From the NCBI RefSeq assembly GCF_006345805.1, contig NC_042997.1, positions 169,074,001 to 169,138,000 of the forward strand: a stretch of 64,000 nt of DNA, in the 5' to 3' direction. Of the stretch, positions 1,197-61,571 are shown piece after piece. Made by a program: the position numbers and the translations under genes. The DNA comes from Octopus sinensis (Eukaryota). The notes beneath the pieces are model-generated. The model saw only the letters and a list, made by a program, of their open reading frames with translations, did not search any database and was not told the DNA's origin. How positions within the stretch are numbered: position 1 is the stretch's first letter; each line of letters opens with the position of its first letter.

Positions 1197-2486
1197 AATC
1201 AGGTCATCAAGTATGAAATTTGTAGAAAAGGGGAAAAAGTTTGCTAATGTTTTATAAATACAAGGAATAGTTTTATTCATCGAAGTATGCACCCATATTG
1301 TCAATACGCTTTTGTTATTTCAGCGGTAGCTTTTCTAGCCTGGCACGTAAAAGCCTGGCAATTTAGAGTCAATAAAATCTTGGAAGGCCTGTTTTACAGC
1401 ATTGTTGGAATTAAATTTTTTCCCTATTGAAAAGTTATCCAAATTGTGGAAGAAGTGGTAGTCAGTGGAGGCAAGATCAGGTGAGTATGGTAGATGATGC
1501 AGAACTTCCAACTCCAACTTCTGTAGTTTCGCCAAAGTCATTTTTGTGATGTGTGATCTGGTGTTGCCTTGCAGTAAAATAGGAGTGGATCTGTTGACTA
1601 ATCTAGGTTGGTCTTTTTTTTTGTAAGTTTCTGCATCATTTGGTCCAGTTGGTAGTAGTATACTTCAGCCATGATTGATGAGCCAGGTTTAATGAAATCA
1701 TAATAGATCAAATCTCTGTCAGATCACCAAACACACCATCGGTTTCTTTTGATGAATTTTGCATTTTGGACTGTGTTTTGGTGACCCATCTTTGTCCAAC
1801 CATTGTGCTGAATGTTTACAGTTATTGTATTGGATCCATTTCTCATCACATGTTGCAATTCAATTCAAAAATGATTCATTTTTGTGATGAGAAATAAAAG
1901 CATAAGGCAAGCTTCCAAATGTTGCTGTTTCAGATCTTTATTGAGTTCATGTTGAACCCACTTATCCAGCTTTTTCACTTTACTAGGTGAATCAATATTG
2001 ATTGCTTGCTAACAGCAAACAACAACGATAATTCATGGGCACGCTGAGATGGATCTGACTCGACTGTGGCTTTCAGTTTGTCATTATACACCTTTGTTTC
2101 TGGTCGACCACGTTGCTCATTTGTGAGGTCAAAGTTACCTGAACAAAATTTTGCAAACCAATTTGATACTGTCTGCTGTGTAATAACATTAGAGTGAAAT
2201 ACTCCATTAATATTCCGAGCTGTCTGTGATGCTGTATTTCCAAGAAAGAACTCATATTTCAAAACTGTACGAATTTCCAACTTATCCATCTCTAAACAAA
2301 AATAGCAAAAAAAAAAAACATTTATAAATACTTTATAAAGTGCAAAATGAGTTAGAATAATGAAATAGATGTGTCAGCTTTCTAACCAAAAATAAAGATT
2401 GTCAAAATATATTAATGGCACAAAATGAGCAGCTGTCAAAGTTTACCTTATACCTTACTACAAATTTCATACTTGATGACCTAATA
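1197..2486 (-). mobile_element. Full-length but disrupted mariner element
   Basis: Perfect 25-bp inverted repeats AGGTCATCAAGTATGAAATTTGTAG (1201-1225) and 2458-2482; about 1.29 kb; HTH N-terminus (2289-1975), WVQHEL (WVPHEL-like) and PYSPDLASTDYH motifs; ORF broken. Confidence 0.93.
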
Positions 2487-9865: not shown

Positions 9866-11433
9866 TTTATTACTGAATTCAGAATCTTTTATACAGAAAT
9901 CATACGAAAAGATTATGTAGCTCAATAACCCAGCTGTTAAAATTTTGGCAGCTCACCATTGCATGTATGTATGCTTGAGTATTTATGTTTTTATATGTAA
10001 GTATTCATGTATGCATATACATGTGTGAGTATAAAACTACACACGTGTTCAGTTGCTACAAAATTTTTCGTTTATATTCATGTGTATATAAATGTAAAAT
10101 GTTTGTGTATATTAGTGATATGTTTTTGATAAGGATGGTAAAACAGTGCGTGTTGAATATCAAGGTATGTTAAACTTGTATGTTTCTGTTTTTTTTTTTT
10201 CTCCCTTTTTTCATTCTTTCATTTTGCATACAAAAGTAGGTTAGCTGAATGGATAAGAGGTGAGACCACCTGCTCATAAATCTAAAGTTCTCTCCTTTGG
10301 CACCCTTATTAAGAATAATCATTAATGCTAATGACTGATCTTCTCATTACAGCTGTAATTTTAATGTATTAAGCATTATTTTGCTTCACTACATATTAAT
10401 CCACACTTAACAATATGTTCTTCATGAAGCTGGTACTCCTGGGAAATTTTCTACTACTTTACCTGTTCATAGGTTGTAAGTTCAAATCTAAGACAGGCAT
10501 TTCAAAGTACTTTTGAATGAAACATTATATGCTATATTTCTCCTGACAATGTATTTGTTTGGTTATATATATATACATATATATATACCAGATCAATCTG
10601 GTATCTGTTACCTATGATAGAATTATGACATAGCCAAAGGAAGACTTATCTCTACTGCTTCACATAGTGAAGCCAAAGTTAAGCACCGATTCTCAAAAGC
10701 TCTTTTGATTTGGAAATATTCACTATTTTATATCTATTTTCAATACTAAACATGAGAAAATTAATTTCTTTGTTTGAGCAATGTGATACTAGATTTAAAG
10801 CAAAGTATCATTTGTATTGATAATTTTTCTACTGTGAAGAAGAAGAAAAATTCATCTTGGATAGTCCAGCAAACTGGAGTCACTAAACACATGGGTGTTG
10901 GCTAGAAGTACAGCATGGTAGTTGTTATAAAATTTGGACATATAACCACACGACCTGTAGGCCAGCACATTAACATTACTACAATTACTTTTGCCGGGGA
11001 AAATTAATTTGTCTTATAAGGTGTTAAAAGCCCAGTTCAATCAGCCTTATTGATTAAACTAGCTGTATAACTATACAGAATCTTGTATGTATGTATGTAT
11101 GTATGTATGCATGTATGCATGTATGTATGTATGTATGCATGCATGTATGCATGCATGTGTGTGTGTGCATGAAATGCGTATGCATGTGTGTGTTTGTGTG
11201 TGTGCCTGTATATTTGTATGTGTGTAATTAAAATTTCAAAACTCAGATAAAGAATTCGTGTAACTAACTTCAAAATGAGGTGAGGGCGACTGCCAATACA
11301 TTATAATGATCTGTTTTTACAATAAACTGGTCTTTATAATGTATATGTATGTGGTTATGTTTGTGTATGAGAATGTATTAGTATGTGTGTGTGTGTTTAT
11401 ATATATATATATATATATATAAACATACATTCA

Positions 11434-19665: not shown

Positions 19666-20488
19666 ACAGAGCATTAGTACCTTGAGAGAAATGTTGTACC
19701 TAAGAAGCATCAGTTGTGGTGTGCAAGAAAGACGATTACGCTAGTATGGTCATGTGGCGAGAATGGATGAAGATAGGTGTGTGAAAAAGTGCCAATCCCT
19801 AGCAGTGGAGGGAACCCGTGGAAGAGGTAGACCCAGGAAAACCTGGGACGAGGTGGTGAAGCACGACCTTCGAACTTTAGGCCTCACTGAGGAAATGACC
19901 AGCGACCGAGACCATTGGAAATATGCTGTACATGAGAAGACCAGGCAGGACAAGTGAGCCCAGCCCACTTATGCATGCCTTTCCCCCCTTGAACACAAAG
20001 ACCTGTCGAGGCAAGCGAAGTCGATATCGAACCTCATCTGACGACAGGCACCCATGCCAACCCCCTTTGCTTGCGAAGACATATTGGGGCAAGTGAAATC
20101 GAAATCGAAATTGAACCAATCCTATGACTGGCACCCGGCAGATGCCAGGACCCCTGGACTGGTGGTACGTAAAAAGCACTATCTGAATCGTGGCCGATGC
20201 CAGCGCCGCCTCAACTGGCTTCCGTGCTGGTGGCACGTAAAATGCACCAATCCGACCGTGGCCGTTGCCAGCCTCGCCTGGCACCTGTGCGGGTGGCACA
20301 TAAAAAGCACCCACTACACTCATGGAGTGGTTGGCGTTAGGAAGGGCATCCAGCTGTAGAAACATTGCCAGATAAGACTGGAGCCTGGTGCAGCCTTGTG
20401 GCTTCCCAGATCCCCGGTCAAACCGTCCAACCCATGCTAGCATGGAGAACGGACGTTAAACGATGATGATGATGATGATGATGATGAT
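19663..20488 (+). mobile_element. 5'-truncated RTE LINE
   Basis: GHVARMDEDRCVKKCQSLAVEGTRGRGRPRKTWDEVVKHDLRTLGL...EKTRQDK*, then the 3' UTR and (GAT)n tail. Confidence 0.93.
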
Positions 20489-30255: not shown

Positions 30256-33200
30256 TCATCATCATCATCATCATCATTTAGCGTCCGTTTTCCATGCTAG
30301 CATGGGTGGACGGTTCAACTGGGGTCTGGGGAGCCCGAAGGCTGCACCAGGCCAGTCAGATCTGGCAGTGTTTCTACAGCTGGATGCCCTTCCTAACGCC
30401 AACCACTCCGAGAGTGTAGTGGGTGATTTTATGTGCCACCGACACAGGTGCCAGACGAGGCTGGCGAACGGCCACGCTCGGATGTGTGTTTTTATGTGCC
30501 ACCGACACAGGTGCCAGACGAGGCTGGCAGACGGCCACGCTCGGATGGTGTTTTTATGTGCCACCGACACAGGTGCCAGATGAGGCTGGCGGACGGCCAC
30601 GATCGATCGGATGGTGTTTGTTACGTCCCCAAAGCACGGAGGCCAGTCTATGCGGTACTGGCTACGGCCACGTTCGGATGATTTTCTTGTGTGCCACCGG
30701 CACTGGTACCACAAAGATACAAATTCCATTTATGTTCATCTATTTTGATTTGTTTTGATTTGATTTTGATTTGATTTGATTTGATTTTCACTTGCCTCAA
30801 CAGGTCTTCACAAGTGTCACAAGAAGGAAGGTATGCATAGGTGGACTGTCTACGTCGCCGGGTCTTCGGATGGTGTCTTTATGTGCCACCGACAAGGTGC
30901 CAGATGTGGCTGGCGAACGGCCACGATCGGATGGTTTTCTTGTGTGCCACCGGTACTGGAACCACAAAGATACAAATTCCATTGATGTTCATCTATTTTG
31001 ATTTGGTTTGATTTCACTTGCCTCAACAGGTCTTCACAAGTGTCACGCGTGTCACACACTTGCCTCAACAGGTCTCCACACAAAGATACCAATTCCATTT
31101 ATGTTCATCTATTTGATTTGTTTTGATTTGATTTGATTTGATTTGATTTTCACTTGCCCTCAACAGGTCTTCACAAGTGTCACAAAAGGAAGTGGCATAG
31201 GTGGACTGTCTACGTCGCCGGGTCTTCGGATGGTGTCTTTATGTGCCACCCGACACAGGTGCCAGATGTGGCTGGCGAACGGCCACGATCGGATGGTTTT
31301 CTTGTGTGCCACCGGGACTAGGAACCACAAAGATACAAATTCCATTGATGTTCATCTATTTTGATTTGGTTTGATTTCACTTGCCTCAACAGGTCTTCAC
31401 AAGTGTCACGCGTGTCACACACTTGCCTCAACAGGTCTCCACAAGTGTCACACCACTTGCCTCTGCCTCAACAGGTCTTCACAAGTGTCACACACTTGCC
31501 TCAACAGGTCTTCACAAGTGTCATAAGAGGGAAGGTATCACATGTGGACTGACTACGTCGCCGGGTCGTCGGATGGGTCTTTATGTGCCCCGGCACAGGG
31601 CCAGATGAGGTGGCGAACGGCCACGATCGGGGTGTTGTTGTGCCCACAGCACGGAGGCCAGTCGATGCGGTACTGGTTACGGCCACGTTTGGGTGGTTTT
31701 CTTGTGTGCCACCGGCACTGGTACCGAACAAAAATATACAATTCCACTGATGTTCATCTATTTTGATTTGTTTTGATTTGATTTGATTTCACTTGCCTCA
31801 ACAGGTCTTCATAAGTGTCACAAGAAGGAAGGTATGCACAGGACTGACTACGTCCCCGGGCGGGGCCACGGGTTATGGCCTGACTAGTCTTGCCGGGTCT
31901 TCTCATGCACAGCATACTTCCATATGGTCTCGGTCTCTAGACATTTCCTTAGTGAGACCTAAAGTTCGAAGGTCGTGCTTCACCACCTCGTCCCAGGTTT
32001 TCCTGGGTCTACCTCTTCCACAGGTTCCCTCCACTGCTAGGGTGTAGCACTTTTGCACACAACTATCTTCAGCCTTTCTGTCACATGACCATACCAGCGC
32101 AGCCGTCTCTCTTGCACGCCACACTGACCTTCTTAGGTTCAACTTTTCTCTCAAGGAACTTACACTCTGACGATTATGAACACTGACATTACACATCCAT
32201 CGGAGCATACTGGCTTCATTTCTTGCGAGCTTACGCATATCCTCAGCAGTCACGGCCCCTGTTTCACTACCATGTAGCATGGCTGTACGTACACATGCAT
32301 CATACATTCTGCCTTTTACTCTGAGCGAGAGGCCTTTGTCACCAGCAGGGTAAGAGCTCTCTAAACTTTGCCCAGGCTATTCTTACTCTAGCAGTTACAC
32401 TTTCAGCACCCCACCCCCGCTACTGACTTGGTCTCCTAGGTAGCGGAAGCTATCAACTACTTCTAGTTTGTCTCCCTGGAACGTGGCAGAAGTTGGTCTC
32501 TGCATATTTCCAGTGTTTATTGCTCCTGAGCATTTGCCACAGACAAAAACTATTTTCCTAGTTAGCCTTCCTTTGACATTGCTGCACCTCTTATGTGTCC
32601 ATAGCTTACACTTGGTGCATCTTATAGAGTTTCTACCTACACCTTTTTTACAGATCGAGCAGGGCCATCTACCTGAAGGCGTTTGTGATTGATCTACCTT
32701 CCTACTTATTAGAACTTTGGTTTTTGGCTAGGTTGATTCTAAGGCCCTTCGATTCTAATCCTTGTTTCCACACCTGAAACTTCTCCTCCAGTTCTGATAG
32801 TGACTCAGCAATTAGAGCAAGGTCCTCAGCATAGAGGGGCTCCCAGGGGCAACTGTCTTGAATTCCTCCGTTATTGCCTGGAGGACTATGATAAATAGGA
32901 GGGGACTGAGGACTGAACCTTGGTGGACCCCAACCTCTACCCGGAATTCTTCACTGTACTCGTTGCCAACCCTCACCTTACTAGCAGCGTCTCTGTACAT
33001 GGCTTGAACAGCTCTCACCAACCATTCTTCTATCCTAGTTTCCTCATTGACCACCAGATAAGGGACCGGGGACCCTGTCAAAGGCTTTCTCCAAGTCAAC
33101 AAAAGCCAGGTACAAGGGCTTATCTTTGGCTAGGTATTCTCCTGCAGCTGTCTTACCAGGAATATAGCATCAGTAGTACTTTTCCCTGGCACGAACCCAA

Positions 33201-33650
33201 ACTGCATATCATCTAAGGTAACTCTCTCTCTAATTAGTTGGGCTACAACCCTCTCCGTACCTTCATTACCTGATCCAGCAGCTTGATGCCCCTGTAGTTA
33301 TTTGTCTCTAGGGCGTCGCCTTTACCTTGTAGCAGTTGACTATTATGCTGCTACACCAGTCATTGGGTATGACCCCCTCGTGTATCACCTGGTTAACTAT
33401 ACGGGTGACTAAGCTATAGCCGACACCACCAGATATTTTGAGCATCTCTGCAGTAATTCCTGATGGGCCTGGGCTTTCCCTGTTTTTCATGCTTCTAATT
33501 GCCTTATCTACTAAGGAACTGTTAACTCGGATTGCTGGTCCCTCTGTTGGGTCGACATTCGGCAGACTCTCTTTATCCCATTCATTTTCCTCATTCAGCA
33601 ACCTTTCATAGTGGCGTCTCCAGCTTCTCTCTTTGCATCCTCATTTAACG
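30256..33650 (-). mobile_element. RTE-clade LINE, 5'-truncated (RT region, expanded 3' UTR, tail)
   Basis: PGPSGI.AE, NYRGIKLL, QFGF.PGKST.DAIF, FVDLEKAFDRVP, GVHQGSVLSPLLF, YAED (YADD), FRYLG and RGRPRKTW; several single-base frameshifts; (CAT)n tail at 30256-30276. Confidence 0.96.
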
Positions 33651-37542: not shown

Positions 37543-38570
37543 TCATCATCATCATTTAACATCTGTTGTCCATGCTGGCATGGGTTGGACGGTTTGACTG
37601 GGCTGGCACACTGGAAGGCTGCACCAGACTCCAGTCTGATTTGGCATGGTTTTCTACAGCTGGATGCTCTGCCTAGCACCAACCACTCCAAGAGTGTAAT
37701 GAGTGCTTTTATGTGCCACTGGCAGGGGTGCCATTTGCGTGACACCAGGATGCATTTACGTGCACTGGTATGAGTGCCAATTTGTGTGTCACCGGTATCT
37801 GTCACGACTGATTTTTCTTGGCTTGATGGGTCTTCTTCTCAAGCATGACATAATGCCAATGGTCTTGGTCACTGCCTCAATGAGGCCCAAAGCTTGAAAG
37901 GAACTCCACCACTTCGCCTCCGTCAGGCCCAACACTTGAGAGGAACTCAGCCACTCTGCCTCCGTGAAGCCCAAAGTTTATAAGATGTTCTTCATGTGCC
38001 ACCAACATGGGTGCAATTGGTTTGACAGGTCCTCTCAAGCACAGCATATTGCCAAAGGTATCAGTCACCTGTCATTGCCTCTGTGAGGCCCAAAGTTCGA
38101 AGATCGTGCTTCACCAACTAATCCCATGTCTTCCTGGGTCAACCTCCACCACAGGTTCCCTCCACAGCTGTCCATGTCCATATGCATCACATGACCATAC
38201 CAGCACAATCATCTCTCTTGCACACCACATCTGATTCCTCTTATGCCTAACTTTTCTCTCAAGATGCTTACACTCTGTTGAACATGCACACTGACATTGT
38301 ACATCCAGCAAAGCATACTAGCTTCATTTCTTTCAAGCCTACACATGTCCTCAGCTGTCATAGCACAAGTTTCATTGCCATGCAGCATGGCTGTTCGTAC
38401 ACAGACAACAAACAATCTGCCTTTCTCTCTGAGAGAGAGGCCTTTTGTTGCCAGCAGGGGTAGGAGCTCTCTGAACTTTGCACAACCTAATCTTATTCTC
38501 ACAGCTATGCCCTTGGTACATCCACCTCCACTACTAACTTGGTCACCTAGATAACAGAAGCTATCTACTA
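37543..38570 (-). mobile_element. Degenerate RTE LINE 3' part within a Sec24 intron
   Basis: AKFRELLPLLATKGLSLR...RTAMLHGNET...NEASML remnant, 3' UTR and (CAT)n tail. Confidence 0.88.
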
Positions 38571-38644
38571 TTATTATTATTATTATTATTAAACAAATGT
38601 GGGGGGAAAAAACATACTAAATAAGAAATTCAAAATATACTCAC

Positions 38645-39097: not shown

Positions 39098-39414
39098 AAG
39101 AAATGGCAACAAAGAGGTTAAGATAATTAATGATAAAACAGCAGTAAAATACTCAGCTGTTGTAATGTAACTGCTAATGTTAATATGAAAGAAAAGCTAA
39201 GAGAAAGGCAAACAACTAGTTTAACTACTTAAATAATACAAAAGAGGTCATATGTAATAGGATTGAAATTTCAATATCTTAGAACCAATAGTGAATTGAA
39301 ATAAACACTATAAGTAAATACAATAATAAAATGAAGGTCAAAATACTTGACAAGAAAAAAAATTATTAGATTTTGTATACATCTATCCTTACTTTACACT
39401 GACCTGGGATAACA
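39098..39414. repeat. 317-bp direct repeat, copy 1
   Basis: Highly similar to 40227-40542. Confidence 0.92.
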
Positions 39415-40226: not shown

Positions 40227-40542
40227 AAGAAATGGCAACAAAGAGGATAAGATAATTAATGATAAAACAGCAGTAAAATACTCAGCTGTTGTAATATAAC
40301 TGGTAATGTTAATATGAAAGAAAAGCTAAGATAAAGGCAAACAACTAGTTTAACTACTTAGATAATAGAAAAGAGGCCAAATGTAATAGGAATGAAATTT
40401 TAATATCCTAGAACCAATAGAGAATTGAAATAAACACTATAAGTAAATACAATATAAAATGAAGGTCAAAATACTTGACAAGAAAAAAAATTATTAGATT
40501 TTGTATACATCTATCTTTACTTTACACTGACCTAGGATAACA
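40227..40542. repeat. 316-bp direct repeat, copy 2
   Basis: Highly similar to 39098-39414. Confidence 0.92.
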
Positions 40543-41600
40543 TGGTATGCTCACTGTGAACCATGTTGTTGCACTTATCATGAATAGATCTGTGATAACA
40601 CAAGTTGGTGATCAGTCAAAGATTCTGCTTGGACCACAAAAATATAGCTCGGCAACCATCTATATGCTCAGAACAACTTGGGGTCTTGGAACAAAACCAA
40701 TTTCTCCCATATGATCTATTATTCATTTAACATTATTTTTTGTAACAAAACACTAATGAGAAATGCAGACAGATATATCTAGAAATGTTCCAGGTTATCA
40801 TATTTTAATTTTCATGTAAGATGATATGAAATTGAAAAAGTGTAGACATACAATAAATTTCCTACATCAACAGCATTTACTCAAAAAAGCTTTTATTTCT
40901 CCATTTCATTTTAAAATCAAATGTTTGCTACATCCACTTTTTGTAATTTCTTTACTCTCCTCTCCCTTCATCAGTCTACATGTTGAAAATGCTCAACAAG
41001 TATTCCCAAAAAATGCTTATCTAACTTATTTCAATCAAATGAAATCTCATCTAATGTCTGTTTTACAATCATTTAACATCTGCTTTCCATGTTGGCATGG
41101 GTTGACGGCTTGGCAGGAGTTAGTGAACCAGAGGACTGCACCTAACTCAAATGTCTGCTCTGACATGATTTCTATGGTTGGATACCATTCCTAATACCAA
41201 CATCTTTATAGTGTACAGGATGCTTTTTACGTGGCACTAGTCAAGAAAGCAAGTGTTAAGCAAAGGAGATTTGGCTGCTATTTCTAGCATATCAAGCAAC
41301 CATGCATTGGCTCTCTTTTTTGGCTTGAGTAAAAGTATGTTACAGTTAAGTGTACATATTTATCAACAACTTGCTGTCTGTTGCCATCAGCTAGAACTTT
41401 TACATGTTATACACTTCTATCTCTTTTCTAATCTAATTCTGTAGTAATATTATCTAATTTATATCGCCATGCTTCTCACAAAAACCATTGAATATTCAAT
41501 CATTTATTTGGCTCACTTCAATGTTTTAATCTCAGTTACTATCCAAGGTTCCTGGGTCTTATATTTTGATAGAATTTGAAAATTATAAGTCACAACATAC

Positions 41601-41857
41601 CTTGTTTGATTTAGAAATGTCTTCTCTAACTTGAAGTGCTCCAGGTCCTGCTGAAGGCAAGCATGTTTGAAACACAGTTATTCTTCCTCCAGTTGGACTA
41701 AGAAGTTTATATGAAGCTTCTAAAGTGGCTCCTAGTGCATTTCCGGTTTCCATGTTGTTTGCAAAAAGCTGAGGAAGTTGTTGCAACAGGTCTTGCACAA
41801 GGTCATGGCTTTCATGTAAATTCACTAGCAAACTGTCAGGTAATGGAAGGAAAATAT
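41601..41857 (-). CDS. SEC24A/B: Sec24A/B-like exon, trunk domain
   Basis: TTTTTGTAG acceptor and AAG|GTATGT donor; 257 nt; (D)IFLPLPDSLLVNLHESHDLVQDLL...SPTGGRITVFQTCLPSAGPGALQVREDISKSNK. Confidence 0.96.
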
Positions 41858-42022
41858 CTACAAAAAAAAGTCAAAATAGTCAATTATAACCTTTAAGACA
41901 TTTTCATTTACATTGAAGTTTCTCAATCATTTTTTACCAATGGATCCCTTTGATTCCTATTTTACTTGGATAGACCCTCCTAACCATTTGATGTGTTATT
42001 AAATCATATTACATTATATTAT

Positions 42023-42178
42023 TAGGAATTATTCTTTTACTTGTTTCAGCCATGCGGCTACAGTCATGTTGGAGCACAAAAAAATTTTTAATATTTTGCA
42101 TATTGTAAAAGCATAACCGATTTATTGCAGATAAATTCCAACAGCAAAATTTTATATGGACCTCCAAGGACCATACAG
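42023..42178. repeat. Intronic segment duplicated in inverted orientation at 56790-56948
   Basis: Base-by-base reverse-complement alignment shows about 7 substitutions plus an A-run length difference. Confidence 0.92.
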
Positions 42179-43667
42179 ATACCAGTTGAGACCCAATAAT
42201 ACAAGTTGTAAAAATTTTTTTAACAAGTACATTTTGTCAATCAGAAATATCTTTATTATGTTAGATGAATTTACATTTTCTTCCTGATGAAAAATTTTCT
42301 AATTTTTACTTAGTGGAAAGAATGTAGATATTTGAAATACTGATAGACTGAAAACTTGAGTAATTAAGTTAAAACTGTTCATCATAGTTTGAACTATGAC
42401 CAACCAGGATTTCAAATCTCAATCCCCTTCTAAAGCCAGTCTAAAGAATGTTATCCCATCTTCCAACTAGATTTACTGAAGCATGTAGACTAACATAATT
42501 TGCTTAAAAGGACAAAACAATGTTTATTTAGCCCTTTCATTATCATATTTCTGTTGAAATACACTGCTTTGATTCAATAAATTTTAAAAATAAGGAAAGA
42601 TTTAGTAAAACAGGTGTTGTTTTTAATCTGGTATTTAGAACAAAATTGCCATAGAATTTTGAGAAAAGGCTTTAGTTTAGATCACTTTACAACAAGAGGT
42701 TTGTATCATAAGATCAGAGGTAGTCTTAGGTGGGTTGGTATCAAAAGGGTTAAACTTCTAAAAGGCAGAAACTATGAAGTGCCAGTTATGTTTTCAATAT
42801 CTCTCTGTTCTGAGTTCAATTTAAATCTTTTAAAGGTCAACTCTGCATCCATGTGTCCTATCAATAAAATACCAGTCATGTATGAGGGTTGATTCAGCCA
42901 AATTACCTCTATATAACATAACTTCATAACTGTGGCAAATAAGAAATCAATATTTGATGATGATGATGATGGTGCTAACATCTTAATACTTCAAACAATA
43001 CATTCAAGATGAAATAAGATATATTCAAATGGATGGTGAAATTAGTACAACTAGTAACAAATTCTGAACAAATGATCCTATGATTTAAATGGTCTCTATA
43101 TTAGTAACAAATCAACTAAAAAAGAATCACAATTCATACTAGGAGTGCCAATCTAACTTGCTTTTACTTATAGTAGTTGCAGGTGGGGAAGAGTCACAGA
43201 TTTGGGTGCAATCTCTGTCGGAACAATATGAGAAATAGGTCAAGAAGAAAGACAGTTTGAAAAAAAGACTTTCTATTTCTTTACTGAGAGGCATCAGCAC
43301 TTAAGACAGATGTAAAGAGATAATGTAAAGTAAATATTGAGGCATGAATGATAGCCTGGTAAAGGCAAGAAGAACAAGAAGATTGTTCACATCTAACAAT
43401 GTTATATAAGAATAATATAGAACAGTGTTCTGCAACCTTTTTTTCACTTGTGGTACACTTATATTTTTTTCAAATTTCAGCAGCACACCTAAACTAAAAA
43501 TATAACTAAAAGTATAGTGAAAAAAATTATTTTCAGGTTACATTACACTGCTGCACACCTAGCATCGTCTCATGACACACCAGTGTGGAGCAATGATGTG
43601 GAATGCATTAAGAGGTAACTATAAAACCACAGAATCTAGAATAAATATTAGCAACATGTAAACTTAC

Positions 43668-43832
43668 CATCTATGTCAGAGACAGTCAGCATTTGAGGCT
43701 GAGACAGACCTTCAGCTAAATTGAAAAAATGGATTGCTCTATCAAAAGCTATAAAACCTATCTGTGTACGTGAATCACCAGGTAATTTTTCTAGTTCTGC
43801 CAGTAAGGTTTTACATACAACTGTAAGATAAC
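43668..43832 (-). CDS. SEC24A/B: Sec24A/B-like exon, trunk domain
   Basis: TTTTTCAG acceptor and G|GTAAGT donor; 165 nt; YLTVVCKTLLAELEKLPGDSRTQIGFIAFDRAIHFFNLAEGLSQPQMLTVSDID. Confidence 0.96.
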
Positions 43833-44676
43833 CTGAAAAATATAAATAAGATATTTAGAAAATTTCATTTATGATTTTCAAAATGATTTTACCAATTACA
43901 AAAATATTTATGATGTATGAAACATTAATTAAAAGAAACAATTTATTTTAATTGTAACCTTTAAAACAAGTGTTCGTTGTATTCCTCCCAAATACTGGAG
44001 AGAGTCAAATTGCAGTAAAAACCTAATTCCTTCTCAATGATCTCAAAATTTTGTTTTAAAATTAATTCAAAAATTAATATTTTGATATTAGCCAACAAAA
44101 ATTAAACTAAATCTTCATATCCTAAATAAAAATCACTATAACAACTAAGAGAACAGGAATAATGTCAATTTAAATTCTTTGAATCACTCCCATTCTGTTA
44201 TGCAATGATACTGGAATAGCACACATGTGATTGCTATAAATTGACACTTTTACATGAACTATTTAAATAAGATTTTCACAAAGGATTTTTTCCAGTGTCA
44301 TTCAAGACAGTAATTGCTTCTAAGGTAAGTCAGATCAAAAGTTTTGCTTCAGAATAAACAGCAACCTATGTGAGAACATTGTTGGTGCGAACAAACTAAG
44401 AGCTAAAAACTGAGGTAGATTTTCTATGGTTGGATGCCTTTCCTGCTGCTAACCTTCCATTATACACTAAGCATAATAGCTTTTTACCACTACAAGTAGT
44501 GTTATATTATTGAAGGGTTTTATATTGATGCTAAAGTTTACATTTACTAATGAGTGCTGAATGCTGTAGTACTAATGTAACTATCTATTCCAATAATTTG
44601 TAATAAAGATACGAGTGAAAATCACAATGATAAGAGAAAGCAATTTTCAAAATTAAGTAAATAGCCTCATACACAC

Positions 44677-55384: not shown

Positions 55385-55487
55385 CGTAAGATCTTTAAAT
55401 GGATGGATAATTACTCCTAATGGTAATCGAGATTTGGTCAATAACGCTGAAGTCTGGGGTACAGCATTTAACGTACAACGGAATATT
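55385..55487 (-). CDS. SEC24A/B: Sec24A/B-like exon
   Basis: TTTCCAG acceptor and ACG|GTACGT donor; 103 nt; [34 protein letters not shown] (conserved Sec24 FRCTL...LPLG...HPF). Confidence 0.96.
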
Positions 55488-55529
55488 CTGGAAATAAAAA
55501 GGTTAAATAACTGAAACATCTAGTAGCAA

Positions 55530-55930
55530 TGAATTACAGTAGATAACATGTTATAATAATAATAATGAAATTATTGTATAGTGCTCAGGTGCACCACAAC
55601 TTGTCAGAAAGTGCATATAAAGTGTATGCAGTAATGTACAAATGACTGGAAAGCGAACAATGTATGAGTCAGATACATGCTTGCATGTGTATGGAGGGAA
55701 GAAAATCAGGTGTAGTGTTGGCGAATCTAAGAAAGCATGGAAGTTTTGAAGGATGCAGTGCTCCGACAACTAACAACTGATGCCGGCAGTTTGTTCCATG
55801 CTTCAGCAACTCTCAGCGTGAAAAAATGTTTCCTAAAGTCATGGGAGCTGTGCTGTTTTCTGACTTTGTAAATATGTCCACGGGTGTTAGGCAGGTGGAG
55901 TTTGAAAAGGTGCTCAGAGTTGTTGATAAA
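55530..55930 (-). mobile_element. CR1-type LINE 3' fragment
   Basis: NTRGHIYKVRKQHSSHDFRKHFFTLRVAEAWNKLPASVV...FKTSM. Confidence 0.8.
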
Positions 55931-56092
55931 GTAAGACTCAGATATCCAATAAGTTTCAGAGATACAGATTATTATAGTATAGATTTCATCCATTAGACAA
56001 TAAGAAGCTGTTAAAAATACTTGCAAAGGTATATGTGCTTATAGTTTTAGCTAAAAAAGTGTTGCAGTATACTGTTCTTTTTATACTTTCTT

Positions 56093-56610
56093 CATCACCA
56101 TCATTTAATGTCCGTTGTCTATACTGCCAGCCATGGCTTGGATGGCTTGACCAGAGCGGGCAAGCTGGGGAGCTGCATCAGACTCCAGTCTGATTTGGCA
56201 TGGTTTCTACAACTAGATGCCCTTCCTAAAACCAGCCACTTTACAGAGTGTGCTGGATGTTTTTACACTGCACCACACAGGCGTTTTTACACAGCACCGC
56301 ACAGGTGCTTTTACATGGAACTGCCATGAGCGCTTTTCACCACCAGAGGGACCAGTCTTAACACTTCTACTATGGAGCATTGGTCTTCTTGATTACAGCA
56401 AGGCACCTGACATCTCAGTCCTTTGTCATCTCACCTGAAAGGTTCAGCATCCTGAGGTTATTCTTCAGTACTTTATCTCATGTCTTCCTGGGTTTCCTAC
56501 TTCCCATGTGTTCCATCTACTTTGAGAGATTGGCACTTCGTTATGGAGCTGTTGGCATCCATCCAAATCACATGACCAAACTAGTGCAGTCTTCTCTCTT
56601 GCACACAGCA
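56093..56610 (-). mobile_element. Degenerate RTE 3' fragment
   Basis: (CAT)n-like tail, shared 3' UTR and a degenerate ORF end. Confidence 0.72.
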
Positions 56611-56789
56611 ATTAATCCCTTTTATGCCTAACTCCTTTCTCAATGATTAATGCTATAATTCTTCACCATGACCTAAGAAATCTTATATGTATCATATGAA
56701 AGACTGTGAAGGAAAGATAAAAGTAAAGTGAAAAAAATGAAGTTAGTTTGGTTCATTTCCAGCATACTTAAATATTCTTTTATTGTAAC

Positions 56790-57189
56790 TGTATGGCCCT
56801 TGGAGGTCCATGTAAAATTTTGCTGTTGGAATTTATCTGCAATAAATTGGTTATGCTTTTACAATATGCAAAATATAAATTTTTTTTTTTTTTGTGCTCC
56901 AACATGACTGCAGCCGCATAGTTGAAACAAGTAATAGAATAATTCCTAGTGGCACGTAAAAAGCACCAACTGCTAGTGGCCACTGCCAGCCTCCCCTGGC
57001 ACCTGTGCTGGTGGCACGTAAAAAGCACCCACTACACTCACGGAGTGGTTGGCGTTAGGAAGGGCATCCAACTGTAGAAACACTGTCAGATCAGACTGGA
57101 GCCTGGTGCAGCCTCCTGGATTCCCAGACCCCGGTCGAACTGTCCAACCCATACTAGCATGGGAAACGGACGTTAAATGATGATGATGA
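56790..57189 (+). mobile_element. Chimeric insertion: intron-derived 5' part plus RTE 3' end
   Basis: 56790-56948 is the reverse complement of 42023-42177; 56949-57189 is RTE 3' UTR with (GAT)n; TGTAAC direct repeats at 56784-56789 and 57190-57195. Confidence 0.8.
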
Positions 57190-57773
57190 TGTAACAACAG
57201 AGCATATACACACAAACAGCTGTGTAGAGATGGAGTTTGCTTCATAACCCCACAGCATCTTGGATAAGTATCTTCTACTAAAACCCAAGACCAACCAATG
57301 TTTTGTGAGGGAAATGATAGACAAAAACCCTATAGAGGACTGTCCCGATTCCATTTATGGAATAGTCTGTTATGTCTGACTCAAGTTGAAAATTCTAAAA
57401 ATTGTGCATCTTTTCTAAGCATAGTAGTTTATGCATGTGTGTGTGTGCATGAACATATCAATCTTGAACCAACTTGACACTGTCATTTTGAAATTTGATT
57501 TAAGCTTGTGCTTGCTGAATGTTTTGCTATAAACTCTTAGTAGAAGAAGGCTGATTTGATTTCACAGAAACCTACTCCATATTATTTATGGATGCTCTAT
57601 GTTTTTCCAAGTACAGAAATCCATTATTACAATCCACAGTAGTTGACATAAGAACAAGCTTTTGTCTACATGTATTCCACTTGAATGAGATGGGATAAAT
57701 AAAAACCATATCCACAAACTATATTTTCTACAAAATCTTTGGAGGTAAAATATAAATATCAAGTGCTACTCAC

Positions 57774-57892
57774 TCTGGACTTGCATTTGTTTTACTAAAT
57801 TCATATGGTAAACAGTTAATAGGTGTCTCAACTCCTTCTGGGCCGATGAGTTTTCGTTGCTGTATCAAATCAACGACATCACTAATAGTGTC
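57774..57892 (-). CDS. SEC24A/B: Sec24A/B-like exon
   Basis: TTTTATAG acceptor and GA|GTGAGT donor; 119 nt; DTISDVVDLIQQRKLIGPEGVETPINCLPYEFSKTNASP(E), matching the position of V-N-L-L-Q-E-R...NCNPE in Sec24A; phase fits both neighbours. Confidence 0.88.
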
Positions 57893-58509
57893 CTATAAAA
57901 TAAATAGAAATGTAACCAATTAATACAAAATAACAATTATCTTCTATTTTTTTATTTGTTTCAGTCACTTGACTGTAGCCATTCTGGGGCACTGCTTGAA
58001 GGGTTTTACTTGAACAAATTGACCCCAGGACATTTTTTTCAGCTTACTATTTATTCTTTCAATCTCTTTTGCCCAACTGCTAAGTCACAGAGACATAAAT
58101 ACACCAGCACAAAGACACACATATACACATTAAACAATGATGATGATGGTAAAGTCTAGATCAGTAGGAAATTTGTCATTCATATATATATATATGTATG
58201 TATAAAAAATATATATAAAAATACAAAATGGGACAAGAACGCAAAACATTCAAACAGACGACACAAAAACCAGACGGGTCATTCGAAGTCTCTAATCTTC
58301 AGTCAAGAACTGGATCATCCTCGCAATTTCAGCTGATTAATCTTGAGATCGCTCTGATCCGGCCAGCCCCAAGGAAAAACTAAGCTACAAGCATTAGATT
58401 TCTTGGAAAAAGGATTGAATGTATACGAAACAAGGACATACACACACACATAAATACATACAACTACAAGTGAAATAGCTATTACTAACATACCAATCCG
58501 AGATAATAT

Positions 58510-59060
58510 TATTTGACAAATTAGAGTTATAGCAAACCTTACTCAATGGATATGTAGTGACACCATCACCACTGAATTGTTTAAGGAAATCAATGACAAA
58601 TCCAACTTCAAATTTATCCAGTTTGACATTGTGCTGTTTTACCTATCGATGCCCCAAATTTTCCTCCAACAAGCACTTGAGTTCAGTAAAGTATAGACAA
58701 CTACAACTGATACTGCCATTGCGATCATAATGAATTCAAGAAGATCGTTACTCATCCATAATTTCTATTGAATAAAAGGGAACAATGATGAGCTCTTTGA
58801 TGTTGCTATGGGGAGCCATCATGGGGTGGAAGTAGCGGATCAGGTTAGCCTTTACATCGAGCATAAATTCAGCAATTAAATAAAGGAGGCTAACATAGGG
58901 TTGTATAAGGACAACAGTCCAGCAGTAGTGCACAATAAGAATGGCCACAAAATGGATAAGATAAAGAAATAAAATTATTCAAGATATTTAGTCAGCTTAA
59001 TTTACAGAATACAGTTGGCACTAACCCTGAAAAAGTCAACAACCTAGATATCAATAAAGC
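58510..59060 (+). mobile_element. Penelope-like RT core remnant
   Basis: One frame with stops: QWI...FKEINDKSNFKFIQFDIVLFYLS...FDVAMGSHHGVEVAD...NIGLYKDN (FDI..FYPS, MGS.DG.E, GLYRDD motifs). Confidence 0.85.
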
Positions 59061-59075
59061 AAATATAAAACTTTT

Positions 59076-59435
59076 CATAGGAATGGCTGTGTGGTAAGTA
59101 GCTTGCTTACAAACCACATGCTTCCGGGTTCAGTCCCACTGCGTGGCACCTTGGGCAAGTGTCTTCTACTATAGCCTCGGGTCGACCAAAGCTTTGTGAG
59201 TGGATTTGGTAGACGGAAACTGAAAGAAGCCCGTTGTATATGCGTGTGTGTTTGTCCCCCCAACATCGCTTGACAACCGATGCTGGTGTGTCCCCATAAC
59301 TTAGCAGTTCGGCAAAAGATACTGATAGAATAAGTACTAGGCTTACAAAGAATAAGTCCTGGGGTCAATTTGCTCGACTAAAAGGTGGTGCTCCAGTATG
59401 GACACAGTCAAAATGACTGAAACAAGTAAAAGAGT
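59076..59435 (+). mobile_element. Full-length tRNA-derived SINE
   Basis: Same family as 28661 and 54289. Confidence 0.88.
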
Positions 59436-60045
59436 AATCCTGATAAAGAAACCTCTTATATAAATAAATGTTCCAACCATCCACCACCAATCAGTAATCA
59501 ATATACTCACTCATATGACACAATCCTTTCTTATTCTTAAATTAGACGATATTTTTGTCAGAACAACAATAAAAGATGGTTCCAACATCATGTTGTTCCA
59601 CAACATATTGCTATTAGTGTGATGAATTATAATTGGAACCTTTCAAGGAAGAGGAATTAGGCTATCAGGTCCAGATCTCCAAACCTGACACCTCTCCACT
59701 TATTTTTTTCCTGTAGGTCATCTGAAGTCTACATGAATCACCCAAAACTATCTGCTCATCAAAAGAAGCAGTCGTTATTCACTTGAGATAACATCAGAAC
59801 AGATGTGCTAAAAAATGGGTTCAAAGTTCATGTAAATAACAAAGTCAAAATTATATGTTGAAAGTCACCAATCTGAGCTTCTGTTGCTGCAACTTCAGAC
59901 ATTTAAATAAATTATCTAAGTTCCCTTTATATGAACCAGGCTACAATATCTAAACAAACATGGGTGTATGTTGGGTTCACTCGATATATTCCAACCATGA
60001 TGGAGCACACTACTGATTTCAATCTGGTACTCGTTTTATTGATCT

Positions 60046-60430
60046 CATCATCATCATCGTTTAACGTCCGTTCTCCATGCTAGCATGGGTTGGACGGTTC
60101 GACCGGGGATCTGGGAAGCCAGAAGGCTGCATCAGGCTCCAGTCTTATCTGGCAATGTTCCTACAGCTGGATGCCCTTCCTAACGCCAACCACTCCGTGA
60201 GTGTAGTGGGTGCTTTTTACGTGCCACCCGCACAGGTGCCAGGCGAGGCTGGCAACAGCCACGGTCGGATTGGTGCATTTTACGTGCCACCGGCACGGAA
60301 GCCAGTCGAGGCGGCACTGGCTTCGGCCACGATTCGGATAGTGCTTTTTACGTACCACCAGTCCAGGGGTCCTGGCATCTGCCGGGTGCCAGTCATAGGA
60401 TTGGTTCAATTTCGATTTCACTTGCCCCAA
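60046..60430 (-). mobile_element. Young RTE 3' end
   Basis: (CAT)n tail; near-identical to 20090-20470 in the opposite orientation. Confidence 0.9.
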
Positions 60431-60712
60431 CAAATCTATTTGTTTTCAACAAAATGTTATGTCTTTCAACACACAGAGTCTAACAAAGAAATATGCATAT
60501 ATGTGCACGTGCGCACACACACACACATGAAATTTTTACAACATATTGGTCAACCTGAGGCTAGAGTAGAAAAACTTGCCCAAGCTCACACAATATGGGA
60601 CCGAAACTGAGATCACACAGTTGCAAAGCAAATTCCTTAACCATGTGTCTGTGCATGTATATGTATGTGAGTGGGGGTGTATGTTTGAATGTGTATGCAT
60701 ACATTCTATTTA

Positions 60713-60714
<2 letters not shown>

Positions 60715-60744
<30 letters not shown>

Positions 60745-60767
60745 CACATAGAGAGAGAGATACGGAT

Positions 60768-60837
<70 letters not shown>
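60715..60837. repeat. (TA)n(GA)n(CA)n(TA)n microsatellite
   Basis: Directly visible. Confidence 0.9.
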
Positions 60838-60838
<1 letters not shown>

Positions 60839-61121
60839 TCACTTAGAAAAAAATAATTCTTCCCTAAACATAATTAGAAATAATAATTATTAATTTATTT
60901 ACAGGTATTGGCAAACTAAATATCTTTGCTGAGCATTTATGTACCAAATATCTGTCCAATGATCACGGCCTATAAGGGAGTAGTGTGTCCTACAAAAATA
61001 TGAGCAACACTTATATTGACCATACTGTAATAGAATTTAACAAGGTTTAGGAATTCAATGTAAAACTGAAAGCAGCTTGTATACAGAAGGAAGAGACAAA
61101 TGAAAACTCAGATCACAATAC

Positions 61122-61409
61122 CTTTGTACTAAGATTGCTCATTCCTCCAGTAATACCAGCCATTCCTCCACTTGTAGAATATTGAGAACTTTGTTGTTGT
61201 TGCTGGGGTTGATATTGTTGTGGTTGTTGAGGATGTATTGACTGTTGCAATTGTTGTGGAGGTTGCTGCATCTGTTGTGGAGGTTGCTGCATCTGTTGTG
61301 GGGGTTGTTGCAACTGTTGTGGCGCATGCATTGGACTTCCTGAATAAACTGGAGGCATTCCTGAAGTTGACATGCTTGCTGGGTGAGCTGGAGATTGCAT
61401 CTGAGAAGG
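61122..61409 (-). CDS. SEC24A/B: Sec24A/B-like exon (first visible): P/Q-rich low-complexity N-terminal region
   Basis: TTTCATTTCAG acceptor and AAG|GTATTG donor; 288 nt, phase 0/0; PSQMQSPAHP...QQPPQQM...GMSNLSTK joins in frame to the next exon. Sec24 proteins have P/Q-rich N-termini. Confidence 0.8.
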
Positions 61410-61571
61410 CTGAAATGAAAAACAAATTTTAATAAAGATTCTCAACTAAAAACTAGATACAACAAAAGGATTCTATCTGTATCAATAACAAATGACATTT
61501 CATTCTTGGTAATTCAAGCCTACATGCGGCAAAGTAGGCTTTAGAATTAATAAGAGCTTCTGTAGGCTCAA

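What the first reader, a model, noticed from the sequence alone, without database searches (positions are those of the whole stretch)
56784..57195. Chimeric retro-insertion: an RTE tail fused to about 160 nt of the host gene's own intron, bounded by a TSD
Seen in the sequence: 56790-56948 is the reverse complement of 42023-42177, 14.6 kb away in another Sec24 intron, with about 7 substitutions and an A-run length change. It is joined, with a 2-nt CT overlap, to an RTE 3' UTR and (GAT)n tail. The whole unit is flanked by the 6-bp direct repeat TGTAAC. The 42-kb copy continues naturally on both sides while this copy stops abruptly, so the 42-kb locus looks like the donor. Relative to the RTE, the captured piece is in Sec24 sense orientation. 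Established: non-LTR reverse transcriptases can switch templates (U6/L1-type chimeras). Inference: during target-primed reverse transcription inside the transcribed gene, the RT jumped from RTE RNA onto the local Sec24 pre-mRNA. This would be in-cis capture of host intron RNA, and it also creates a long-range complementary pair within one pre-mRNA.
Basis: partly seen in the sequence, partly recalled or inferred. Interest (0 to 1): 0.75.

Follow-up and report, generated by a model that had tools for sequence, protein, structure and literature searches.

The report
Retroelement tail fused to intron copy
In an intron of an octopus Sec24 gene, a shortened copy of a common jumping-element tail is joined to a 160-base copy of another intron of the same gene; this most likely records one event in which the element's copying enzyme moved onto host RNA, a process already known from mammals and fungi and not proven for this single case.

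Summary
The sequence features are real. Window 56785-56948 (+) is the reverse complement of 42182-42023: 149/165 identical, E 2e-57, K2P 0.066, and the only two copies in the window. It abuts a 5'-truncated copy (56949-57191) of the 3' tail of an RT-encoding LINE/SINE family that ends in (ATG)n. This family has at least 30 copies in 145 kb of octopus DNA. TGTAAC flanks the composite. Both copies lie in introns of a minus-strand Sec24 gene, and the copied piece has gene-sense orientation relative to the tail.

New points:
- The 6-bp repeat is weak evidence (chance about 0.05). It overlaps the microsatellite on one side and donor homology on the other.
- The last ~50 nt of the piece is the antisense 5' head of a very abundant ~200-bp octopus SINE. 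Homology runs ~10 bp and ~105 bp past this fragment on its two sides, which favours copying of a locus over transposition.
- The two parts have compatible ages.

Best reading (about 0.45): one target-primed reverse-transcription event with a template switch onto RNA carrying this intron sequence. DNA-templated patching, a low-copy repeat family, RNA ligation and heterologous twin priming are not excluded. No whole octopus genome or orthologous locus could be reached, so uniqueness and the empty site remain untested. I rate it a new member of a known kind, of moderate interest.

The parts
56784..56789 (.). Left copy of the 6-bp direct repeat TGTAAC (putative target-site duplication). Bases 56785-56789 also match the donor (GTAaC vs GTAtC).
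   Evidence: Sequence read; alignments; chance estimate about 0.05.
56785..56948 (+). Copied piece. It is the reverse complement of 42182-42023, which is the sense of the minus-strand Sec24 transcript at the donor site.
   Evidence: blastn 90.2% identity, E 2e-57; 10 substitutions in 159 bases, K2P 0.066; no Rfam match and no fold signal.
56894..56942 (-). Fragment of the 5' head of an abundant ~200-bp octopus SINE, lying inside the copied piece and antisense to the tail and to the gene.
   Evidence: Alignment with 29 SINE copies from the window and O. vulgaris loci; blast at 77.8% over 45 bp.
56949..57176 (+). 5'-truncated 3' tail (3' UTR type sequence with one and a bit 62-bp units) of an RT-LINE/SINE family.
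   Evidence: Ten full-span copies at 82-91% identity in the window and O. vulgaris loci; 6.1% from a rough consensus. Closest to the 379-bp SINE-like copies c60/c20 and to L003 copies.
57177..57191 (+). (ATG)5, equivalent to (GAT)n: the microsatellite terminus of the element. It overlaps the first two bases of the right TGTAAC.
   Evidence: Sequence read; other copies end in the same microsatellite.
57190..57195 (.). Right copy of the direct repeat TGTAAC.
42023..42182 (-). Presumed donor: 160 bp of the Sec24 intron 41859-43665, 165 bp upstream of the 3' splice site at 41858.
   Evidence: No Rfam match; RNA fold z-score -1.8.
42029..42077 (+). SINE-head fragment at the donor (81.6% to the head consensus), followed by A7T5 and not by the SINE body.
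55385..55486 (-). Sec24 exon immediately downstream (in gene sense) of the recipient intron.
   Evidence: tblastn with Sec24 homologues P0036 and P0034.
61116..61445 (-). Open frame holding the Q/P-rich N-terminal Sec24 exon, upstream of the recipient intron. Exact exon limits were not determined.
   Evidence: ORF translations; identified by eye, not by tblastn.
43666..43836 (-). Sec24 exon upstream of the donor intron.
   Evidence: Pfam Sec23_trunk on the joined exons.
41619..41858 (-). Sec24 exon downstream of the donor intron.
30263..33640 (-). Reference copy of the autonomous element: frameshifted RT ORF, 62-63-bp tandem units in the 3' UTR, and the same tail. It shows that the tail belongs to an RT-encoding non-LTR element.
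   Evidence: RVT_1 at 8e-21; ORF coordinates; Tandem Repeats Finder result; tail alignment.

Best explanation
The feature is a single target-primed reverse-transcription event in the first long intron of a transcribed Sec24 gene.

Inferred steps:
1. The endonuclease/RT of an RTE-type LINE nicked the site ...TTTTAT/TGTAAC/AACAG.
2. The bottom-strand end primed on the (AUG)n terminus of a tail-bearing LINE or SINE RNA.
3. The RT copied about 240 nt of that RNA.
4. It then continued on a second RNA that carried the sequence of the intron 14.6 kb downstream. This was a template switch with 0-3 nt of microhomology, and the most likely second RNA is Sec24 pre-mRNA made at the same locus.
5. It copied about 160 nt of that RNA.
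6. The new end was joined to the upstream target DNA through the GTA.C microhomology.

Shown: the product, which is a 5'-truncated tail fused head-on to a gene-sense copy of intron sequence and bounded by TGTAAC; and the position of both copies in introns of one minus-strand gene.

Inferred: the RNA nature of the template, the identity of the donor and the order of events.

A side effect is a 160-bp intronic inverted repeat that flanks five exons.
For: - The homology is far beyond chance and confined to 160 bp.
- It ends exactly where the tail family homology begins, and other family copies continue 5' of that point.
- No direct repeat flanks the tail alone, whereas a 6-bp repeat flanks the composite.
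- The piece has the orientation of the Sec24 transcript relative to the tail. This is the orientation expected from template switching (bioRxiv 10.1101/2025.02.02.635956, read).
- The piece crosses both ends of an old SINE-head fragment (about 10 bp on one side, about 105 bp on the other) and carries that head antisense. It is therefore a copy of a locus or read-through transcript, not a SINE transposition.
- In the SINE-head part, with the SINE consensus as outgroup, each copy has 2 derived changes (sequences). This fits two neutrally drifting copies.
- The ages agree roughly: about 3.3% per copy against 6.1% for the CpG-rich tail relative to a rough consensus.
- The 6.6% divergence rules out a recent assembly duplication.
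- Among 30 tail copies in 145 kb, only this one has a 5' flank that matches exactly one other place.
- The junction is unique in the window and in 81 kb of O. vulgaris.
- Intronic sequences are documented templates of LINE-mediated insertions in humans (PMC5110952).
Against: - The target-site duplication is only 6 bp, with chance about 0.05, and both copies have another reading.
- Nothing in the piece marks it as RNA-derived: no splice junction, no poly(A), no known RNA family.
- Genome-wide copy number is unknown. The protein-based and DNA scans had no power for octopus DNA.
- O. vulgaris is reported to hold hundreds of small SINE families (PMC13282606).
- A second local duplication 2 kb away (39098-39414 / 40227-40542) shows that DNA-level duplication also happens in this gene.
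- Sense orientation has a prior of one half.
- Intron RNA is scarce compared with the small RNAs usually found in such chimeras.
Confidence: 0.45

Rival explanations
1. DNA-templated patch. During resolution of the 5' end of the insertion, or in an unrelated break repair or replication template switch, a DNA polymerase copied about 160 bp from nearby DNA of the same gene. A single-stranded coding strand in a transcription bubble or R-loop is one possible source. No host RNA served as template.
For: The donor lies only 14.6 kb away in cis and in inverted orientation, which is typical of local template-switch duplications. There is microhomology at both junctions. Another local duplication lies in the neighbouring intron. 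Nothing in the piece is RNA-specific.
Against: The piece sits exactly at the 5' end of a truncated retroelement copy and inside the putative target-site duplication. That position is expected if the same polymerase run made both parts. Patches made by end-joining polymerases are usually much shorter and come from within hundreds of bases (established knowledge, not tested here).
Confidence: 0.17
2. The 160-bp unit is a member of a low-copy repeat family, for example a small SINE-like family sharing the common SINE head. The two copies are independent insertions, and one happens to abut the 5' end of a truncated tail copy.
For: About a third of the unit is a SINE head. O. vulgaris is reported to have about 900 SINE families with recent activity (PMC13282606). 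Only 145 kb of octopus DNA could be searched.
Against: No third copy occurs in the window or in 81 kb of O. vulgaris, where the tail has more than 40 hits and the SINE head 20. Homology extends about 10 bp beyond the SINE 5' end. The unit has no 3' tail, no terminal repeats and no flanking duplication at 42 kb. It would need an insertion exactly at the tail's truncation point. Two copies of a rare family within 15 kb would be a coincidence.
Confidence: 0.15
3. A chimeric RNA was formed first, by RNA ligation of an intron fragment to a broken tail RNA (RtcB-type, as shown for U6/L1) or by aberrant splicing. It was then reverse-transcribed in one run.
For: The product has the same orientation and junction structure as template switching. 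This route is shown experimentally for U6/L1 (PMC6789731, listed; discussed).
Against: There are no splice-site dinucleotides at the junction: the donor continues with AT, not GT. Nothing suggests that this intron fragment has a defined, ligatable 3' end.
Confidence: 0.08
4. Heterologous twin priming. The upstream target end (...TGTAAC-3') primed on an antisense transcript that starts near the SINE head at the 42-kb locus. The piece would then be the complement of an RNA antisense to Sec24.
For: The right-hand end of the piece lies about 10 bp outside the 5' end of the SINE head fragment (6 bp outside the first base that BLAST aligned to the head). A SINE-driven transcript would start there. 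The primer end GTAAC matches the RNA site (GAUAC complement) at 4 of 5 positions.
Against: The fragment keeps only the first ~49 nt of the SINE. A TTTTT run, a polymerase III stop, follows about 60 nt from the start, yet 100 nt more are copied. No evidence of an antisense transcript exists. The closeness of the two ends has a chance of roughly 10-15% (my estimate).
Confidence: 0.07
5. Assembly artefact: a mis-joined or duplicated stretch.
For: None found. Reads were not available.
Against: The two copies differ by 10 substitutions and an indel, and the junction lies in otherwise ordinary sequence.
Confidence: 0.02

Closest known systems
U6/L1 and other bipartite LINE-1 chimeric retrocopies of mammals (template switching or RtcB ligation; PMC4476161, PMC6789731, bioRxiv 10.1101/2025.02.02.635956)
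   Same: A 5'-truncated LINE part with an intact 3' end is fused directly to a second transcript in the same orientation. The whole is bounded by a target-site duplication, and the junction has little or no homology.
   Different: Here the enzyme family is RTE-type with a microsatellite tail, not L1 with poly(A). The partner is not an abundant small RNA copied end to end but 160 nt from the middle of an intron. The presumed donor lies in the same gene as the insertion.
Class 1 templated sequence insertion polymorphisms in humans (PMC5110952)
   Same: LINE machinery inserts copies of intronic or intergenic sequences from elsewhere in the genome, with target-site duplications.
   Different: Those pieces are polyadenylated and inserted on their own in trans. 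Here the piece rides on the 5' end of a retroelement tail and has no tail of its own.
MINE / WEIRD chimeric retro-pseudogenes of Magnaporthe (PMC2104539)
   Same: Template jumps during LINE reverse transcription outside mammals give bi- and tripartite chimeras.
   Different: The partner there is one highly expressed non-coding RNA used recurrently. Here a single event involves host intron sequence.
Birth of SINEs from RTE tails (Malik and Eickbush 1998, cited in PMC9115989)
   Same: An RTE 3' tail is joined to an unrelated 5' module. The window itself holds 379-bp SINE-like elements (60042-60419, 20101-20479) built this way.
   Different: This chimera shows no sign of having been amplified, and its 5' module has no evident promoter.

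Membership tests
LINE template-switch chimeric retrocopy (U6/L1 type) | 3' component is a 5'-truncated LINE/SINE copy with an intact 3' terminus | tested here: met
   56949-57191 aligns to the family through to the (ATG)n end. Other copies continue 5' of the truncation point.
LINE template-switch chimeric retrocopy (U6/L1 type) | 5' component fused directly, in the sense orientation of a cellular transcript | tested here: met
   The junction is at 56948/56949 with 0-3 nt overlap. The piece equals the minus-strand (Sec24-sense) sequence of 42182-42023.
LINE template-switch chimeric retrocopy (U6/L1 type) | Target-site duplication flanks the whole chimera and not its parts | tested here: inconclusive
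   TGTAAC is on both sides, and there is no repeat of 5 bp or more around the tail alone. However, chance is about 0.05 and both copies are ambiguous. Full-length family copies in the window also show only short, unclear duplications.
LINE template-switch chimeric retrocopy (U6/L1 type) | 5' component demonstrably RNA-derived (complete small RNA, spliced exons, or RNA ends) | tested here: inconclusive
   No Rfam family and no fold signal. The piece is unspliced intron sequence, so sequence alone cannot show an RNA origin.
LINE template-switch chimeric retrocopy (U6/L1 type) | Empty site in an allele or related species | not testable with these tools
   No route to an orthologous octopus locus. 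The metagenome and viral collections hold no octopus DNA.
RTE clade of non-LTR retrotransposons | Single ORF with apurinic-type endonuclease plus reverse transcriptase; placement in the RTE clade | tested here: inconclusive
   RVT_1 (8e-21) was found in the copy that carries the same tail. That copy is 5'-truncated, no endonuclease part was seen, and no phylogeny was done.
RTE clade of non-LTR retrotransposons | Short-tandem-repeat (microsatellite) 3' terminus instead of poly(A) | tested here: met
   (ATG)n/(GAT)n ends all copies. The literature describes microsatellite 3' UTRs for octopus RTE-2_OV (PMC9115989).
Dispersed repeat family (SINE/MITE) as origin of the 160-bp unit | Further copies with the same ends elsewhere | tested here: not met
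   There are 0 further copies in the 64-kb window and in 81 kb of O. vulgaris. Power is low, so only very high copy numbers are excluded.
Dispersed repeat family (SINE/MITE) as origin of the 160-bp unit | Terminal hallmarks (3' tail, terminal inverted repeats, own target-site duplication) | tested here: not met
   None at 42023/42182 or at 56785/56948.
Intron-encoded small RNA (snoRNA type) as donor | Match to a known RNA family or a stable conserved fold | tested here: not met
   Best Rfam E-value is 0.18, far below the gathering score. Fold z-scores are -1.8 and +1.1.
Sec24 (COPII coat) host gene | Zinc finger, trunk and beta-sandwich domains in order on one strand | tested here: met
   PF04810, PF04811 (2.8e-75) and PF08033 on the joined minus-strand exons. 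Ten colinear exons found by tblastn.

The most novel reading that the evidence does not exclude
RTE-type reverse transcriptases working inside a transcribed gene may preferentially jump onto the nascent pre-mRNA of that same gene. This in-cis capture would seed gene-specific intronic inverted repeats. Here the result is a 160-bp, about 94% complementary pair flanking five Sec24 exons (591 nt), which could drive back-splicing or ADAR hyper-editing in an animal known for heavy RNA editing. The same process may feed the unusual diversity of octopus SINE families.
Probability: 0.1. Interest if true: 0.65.

Novelty: new member of a known kind. Interest (0 to 1): 0.35.

Why it matters
If confirmed, this would be a clean example outside mammals and fungi of a non-LTR reverse transcriptase joining host RNA to its own tail, and it would involve an RTE-type element. 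It would also be a rare case in which the donor is intron sequence of the gene being invaded. That points to local, co-transcriptional RNA as a substrate and to a route by which new SINE-like modules and intronic inverted repeats arise in the repeat-rich octopus genome. As a single, roughly 9-million-year-old, unverified case it changes nothing on its own. Its value is as a seed for a genome-wide survey whose strand bias would separate RNA from DNA templating.

Tried and rejected
Checks that led nowhere:
1. Hidden small-RNA gene as donor. Rfam on both copies and on the whole window found nothing, and RNA folds were no better than shuffles. Rejected.
2. Protein-space searches for further copies. 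The junction ORF and the ORFs inside the piece are not on record, and the translated piece has no homologue. The control with the very abundant tail returned only four O. vulgaris proteins, so these negatives carry almost no weight.
3. Route to the orthologous Sec24 locus. The exon query found no octopus Sec24. Ten long window ORFs are not in the collection. The representative search gave at best 65% identity. This failed.
4. DNA scans of metagenome and viral collections. A 26-mer of the piece gave nothing, but the SINE-head positive control also gave nothing. Uninformative.

Ideas considered and rejected:
5. The neighbouring sense-oriented tail copies as source of the tail. c41 (41068-41237) is only 74% identical, and c56 shares none of the c60-specific changes. 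Rejected.
6. Cis- or trans-splicing at the junction. There is no GT after the donor end. Rejected.
7. The remainder of the SINE body near the donor or the recipient. It is absent, so the head fragment was already truncated before the duplication.
8. ADAR-type A-to-G excess in the copy relative to the donor. Only 1 of 10 differences fits. No signal.

Full report
**What is in the sequence**

Window 56785-56948 on the plus strand is the reverse complement of 42182-42023. BLASTN gives 149 of 165 columns identical and E 2e-57, and this is the only other hit in the 64-kb window. A global alignment shows 10 substitutions (6 transitions, 4 transversions) in 159 aligned bases, plus six gap columns that all lie in an A/T homopolymer. 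K2P is 0.066. The count is 10 rather than about 7 differences, and homology may begin five bases earlier (GTAaC against GTAtC).

**The element next to it**

Immediately 3' of the piece, 56949-57176 followed by (ATG)5 at 57177-57191 belongs to a family with more than ten copies in the window. The family also has dozens of hits in four Octopus vulgaris loci that I fetched (L001-L004).
- Other copies run on further 5' at the point where this one stops, so this copy is 5'-truncated.
- One copy (30502-30263, minus strand) is the 3' end of an element whose frameshifted ORF matches RVT_1 at 8e-21. Its 3' UTR holds 62-63-bp tandem units.
- Two 379-bp copies (60042-60419 and 20101-20479) are 96.6% identical and share a 5' end. 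They look like a SINE riding on this tail.
- The copy under study is nearer to these SINE-like copies (about 90%) than to the RT-bearing copy (85%).

The tail therefore really is the tail of an RT-encoding non-LTR element. Microsatellite 3' ends are what the literature describes for octopus RTE elements (PMC9115989). I did not test clade membership. The shared repeat families identify the source as an octopus; the species is not established.

**Gene context**

- Joined minus-strand exons match the Sec23/Sec24 zinc finger, trunk (2.8e-75) and beta-sandwich domains.
- tblastn with a Sec24 homologue places ten colinear minus-strand exons between 55486 and 35003.
- A Q/P-rich N-terminal exon lies at about 61.1-61.4 kb.
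- The insertion lies in intron 55487-61115. The other copy lies in intron 41859-43665, 165 bp upstream of a 3' splice site.
Five exons (591 nt) lie between the two copies.

**The target-site duplication is weaker than it looks**

TGTAAC is present on both sides. A shared 6-mer within eight bases of two such boundaries occurs in about 5% of random pairs of positions in this window. The TG of the right copy can be read as the end of (ATG)n. GTA.C of the left copy matches the donor at four of five positions.

These ambiguities fit microhomology-guided priming and end joining, but they leave very little unambiguous duplicated target. In favour of the composite, no repeat longer than 4 bp flanks the tail alone. 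Full-length family copies in the window also have only short, unclear duplications.

On the opposite strand, 42029-42077 (= 56942-56894) is the first ~49 nt of a very abundant ~200-bp octopus SINE with a (CA)-rich end.
- There are 13 copies in the 20 kb of L001, 5 in L003 and 9 in the window.
- At the donor it is only 81.6% like the consensus. It is followed by A7T5 and unrelated sequence, and no SINE body lies nearby.
- The duplicated segment runs about 10 bp beyond the SINE 5' end on one side and about 105 bp beyond the fragment on the other.
- That remaining ~105 bp has no other match in 145 kb of octopus DNA.

The pair is therefore a copy of a particular locus that happens to contain an old SINE fragment, not two SINE insertions. 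Because the head is antisense in the captured orientation, a SINE transcript cannot be the template for a template-switch product, whereas a host read-through transcript can. With the SINE consensus as outgroup, each copy has two derived changes in the head. This matches two neutrally drifting copies.

**Age**

The pair differs by K2P 0.066, about 3.3% per copy. The CpG-rich tail is 6.1% from a rough ten-copy consensus that mixes subfamilies. These values are compatible with one event but do not prove it.

Using the calibration in PMC13282606, the event is of the order of 9 million years old. That is younger than the reported O. vulgaris / O. bimaculoides split. The divergence also rules out a recent assembly duplication.

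**Tests of uniqueness and their limits**

- Of 30 tail copies in 145 kb, only this one has a 5' flank that matches exactly one other place.
- The junction is unique in the window at up to three mismatches and absent from the O. vulgaris loci.
- Beyond that, nothing could be tested. The translated piece has no hit in the protein collection. The control with the hugely abundant tail returned only four annotated O. vulgaris proteins, so that negative has no power.
- Exact look-ups of local ORFs failed.
- The metagenome and viral DNA collections contain no octopus DNA, shown by the SINE-head control.
- No octopus Sec24 protein could be obtained to reach the orthologous locus.

**Mechanism**

The anatomy is that of the bipartite LINE chimeras known from mammals and fungi: a truncated element with an intact 3' end, a second sequence fused head-on in transcript sense, and a duplication around the whole (PMC2104539). 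LINE-mediated insertion of intronic sequence is documented in humans (PMC5110952).

I therefore favour, at about 0.45, one target-primed reverse-transcription event with a template switch onto RNA carrying this intron sequence. Sec24 pre-mRNA from the same locus is the most economical donor.

Four readings give the same final sequence and cannot be excluded:
- A DNA-templated patch copied from nearby DNA (0.17). A second local duplication 2 kb away, 39098-39414 against 40227-40542, raises its plausibility.
- A low-copy repeat family with a chance juxtaposition (0.15). O. vulgaris is reported to hold about 900 small SINE families.
- Ligation of the two RNAs before reverse transcription (0.08).
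- Twin priming on an antisense transcript starting at the SINE head (0.07). This would explain why one end of the piece lies within 10 bp of the head's start, but it conflicts with a T5 stop 60 nt in.

**Consequence for the transcript**

In the pre-mRNA the two copies are complementary. The predicted duplex is -235 kcal/mol, and it is the only substantial complementary pair between these two introns. Whether this affects splicing, circular RNA formation or editing is speculation.

**Verdict**

This is most likely a further example of a known kind of event, in a new host and element family, with an unusual in-cis intronic donor. The decisive tests are whole-genome copy number, the orthologous empty site and the strand bias of similar chimeras genome-wide. 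They are simple but were out of reach here.

Noticed in passing
window 39098-39414 and 40227-40542: A second local two-copy duplication: 317 bp, 95.3% identical, direct orientation, 1.13 kb apart, in the Sec24 intron next to the donor intron. There are no other copies in 145 kb. The second copy is preceded by A11, and the spacer starts with a repeat seen in O. vulgaris loci. It could be a partial tandem duplication or a small terminal-repeat element.
   Followed up: partly
window 29064(-), 59437(-), 54293(+), 26484(-), 47603(+), 36170(-), 57950(+), 4515(+); L001 (13 copies), L003 (5 copies): A very abundant ~200-bp SINE with head TTACTCTTTTACTTGTTTCAGTCATTTGACTGCGGCCATGCTGGAGCACCGCC and a (CA)-rich tail. 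Several O. vulgaris copies match this head query exactly (100% over 46-48 nt), which suggests recent activity.
   Followed up: partly
window 60042-60419 (-) and 20101-20479 (+): Two 379-bp elements, 96.6% identical, with the same 5' end. They consist of about 60 bp of non-LINE head joined to the LINE 3' tail, so they look like a SINE-like non-autonomous family built on the same tail.
   Followed up: partly
window 30263-33640 (-) and 38022-38616 (-): A 5'-truncated, frameshifted RT-encoding non-LTR element in sense orientation inside a Sec24 intron. It has RVT_1, a weak PHD-like finger and a 3' UTR with 62-63-bp and 363-bp tandem units. A second, 76% identical fragment of its C-terminal region lies at 38 kb.
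   Followed up: partly
L001 3684-4596 (O. vulgaris OX597840.1): The last ~128 bp of the tail occurs as a head-to-tail array with a period of about 137 bp (at least six units). The LINE 3' end has been amplified there as a small satellite.
   Followed up: no
window 1338-2373 (-): Remnant of a mariner/Mos1-type transposase: HTH_48 at 1e-14 on 1978-2373, and a 'HHLPYSPDLASTDYHFF' motif in 1338-1664 seen by eye.
   Followed up: partly
window 41068-41237 (-): An old (74% identical) tail copy lies 786 bp downstream of the donor piece in gene-sense orientation. Several other tail copies (c60, c56b, c51, c37, c30, c22) are also gene-sense, so the Sec24 pre-mRNA itself carries several LINE 3' tails.
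   Followed up: partly
window 1-35002: No exon for the C-terminal fifth of Sec24 (helical and gelsolin domains, residues beyond about 985 of the homologue) was found below 35003. The gene probably continues beyond the window through a very long intron.
   Followed up: partly
P0029-P0032; L001-L004 positions 10001-10363: The public O. vulgaris annotation calls short single-exon ORFs inside copies of this LINE tail 'hypothetical predicted protein'. They are most likely repeat-derived false genes.
   Followed up: no
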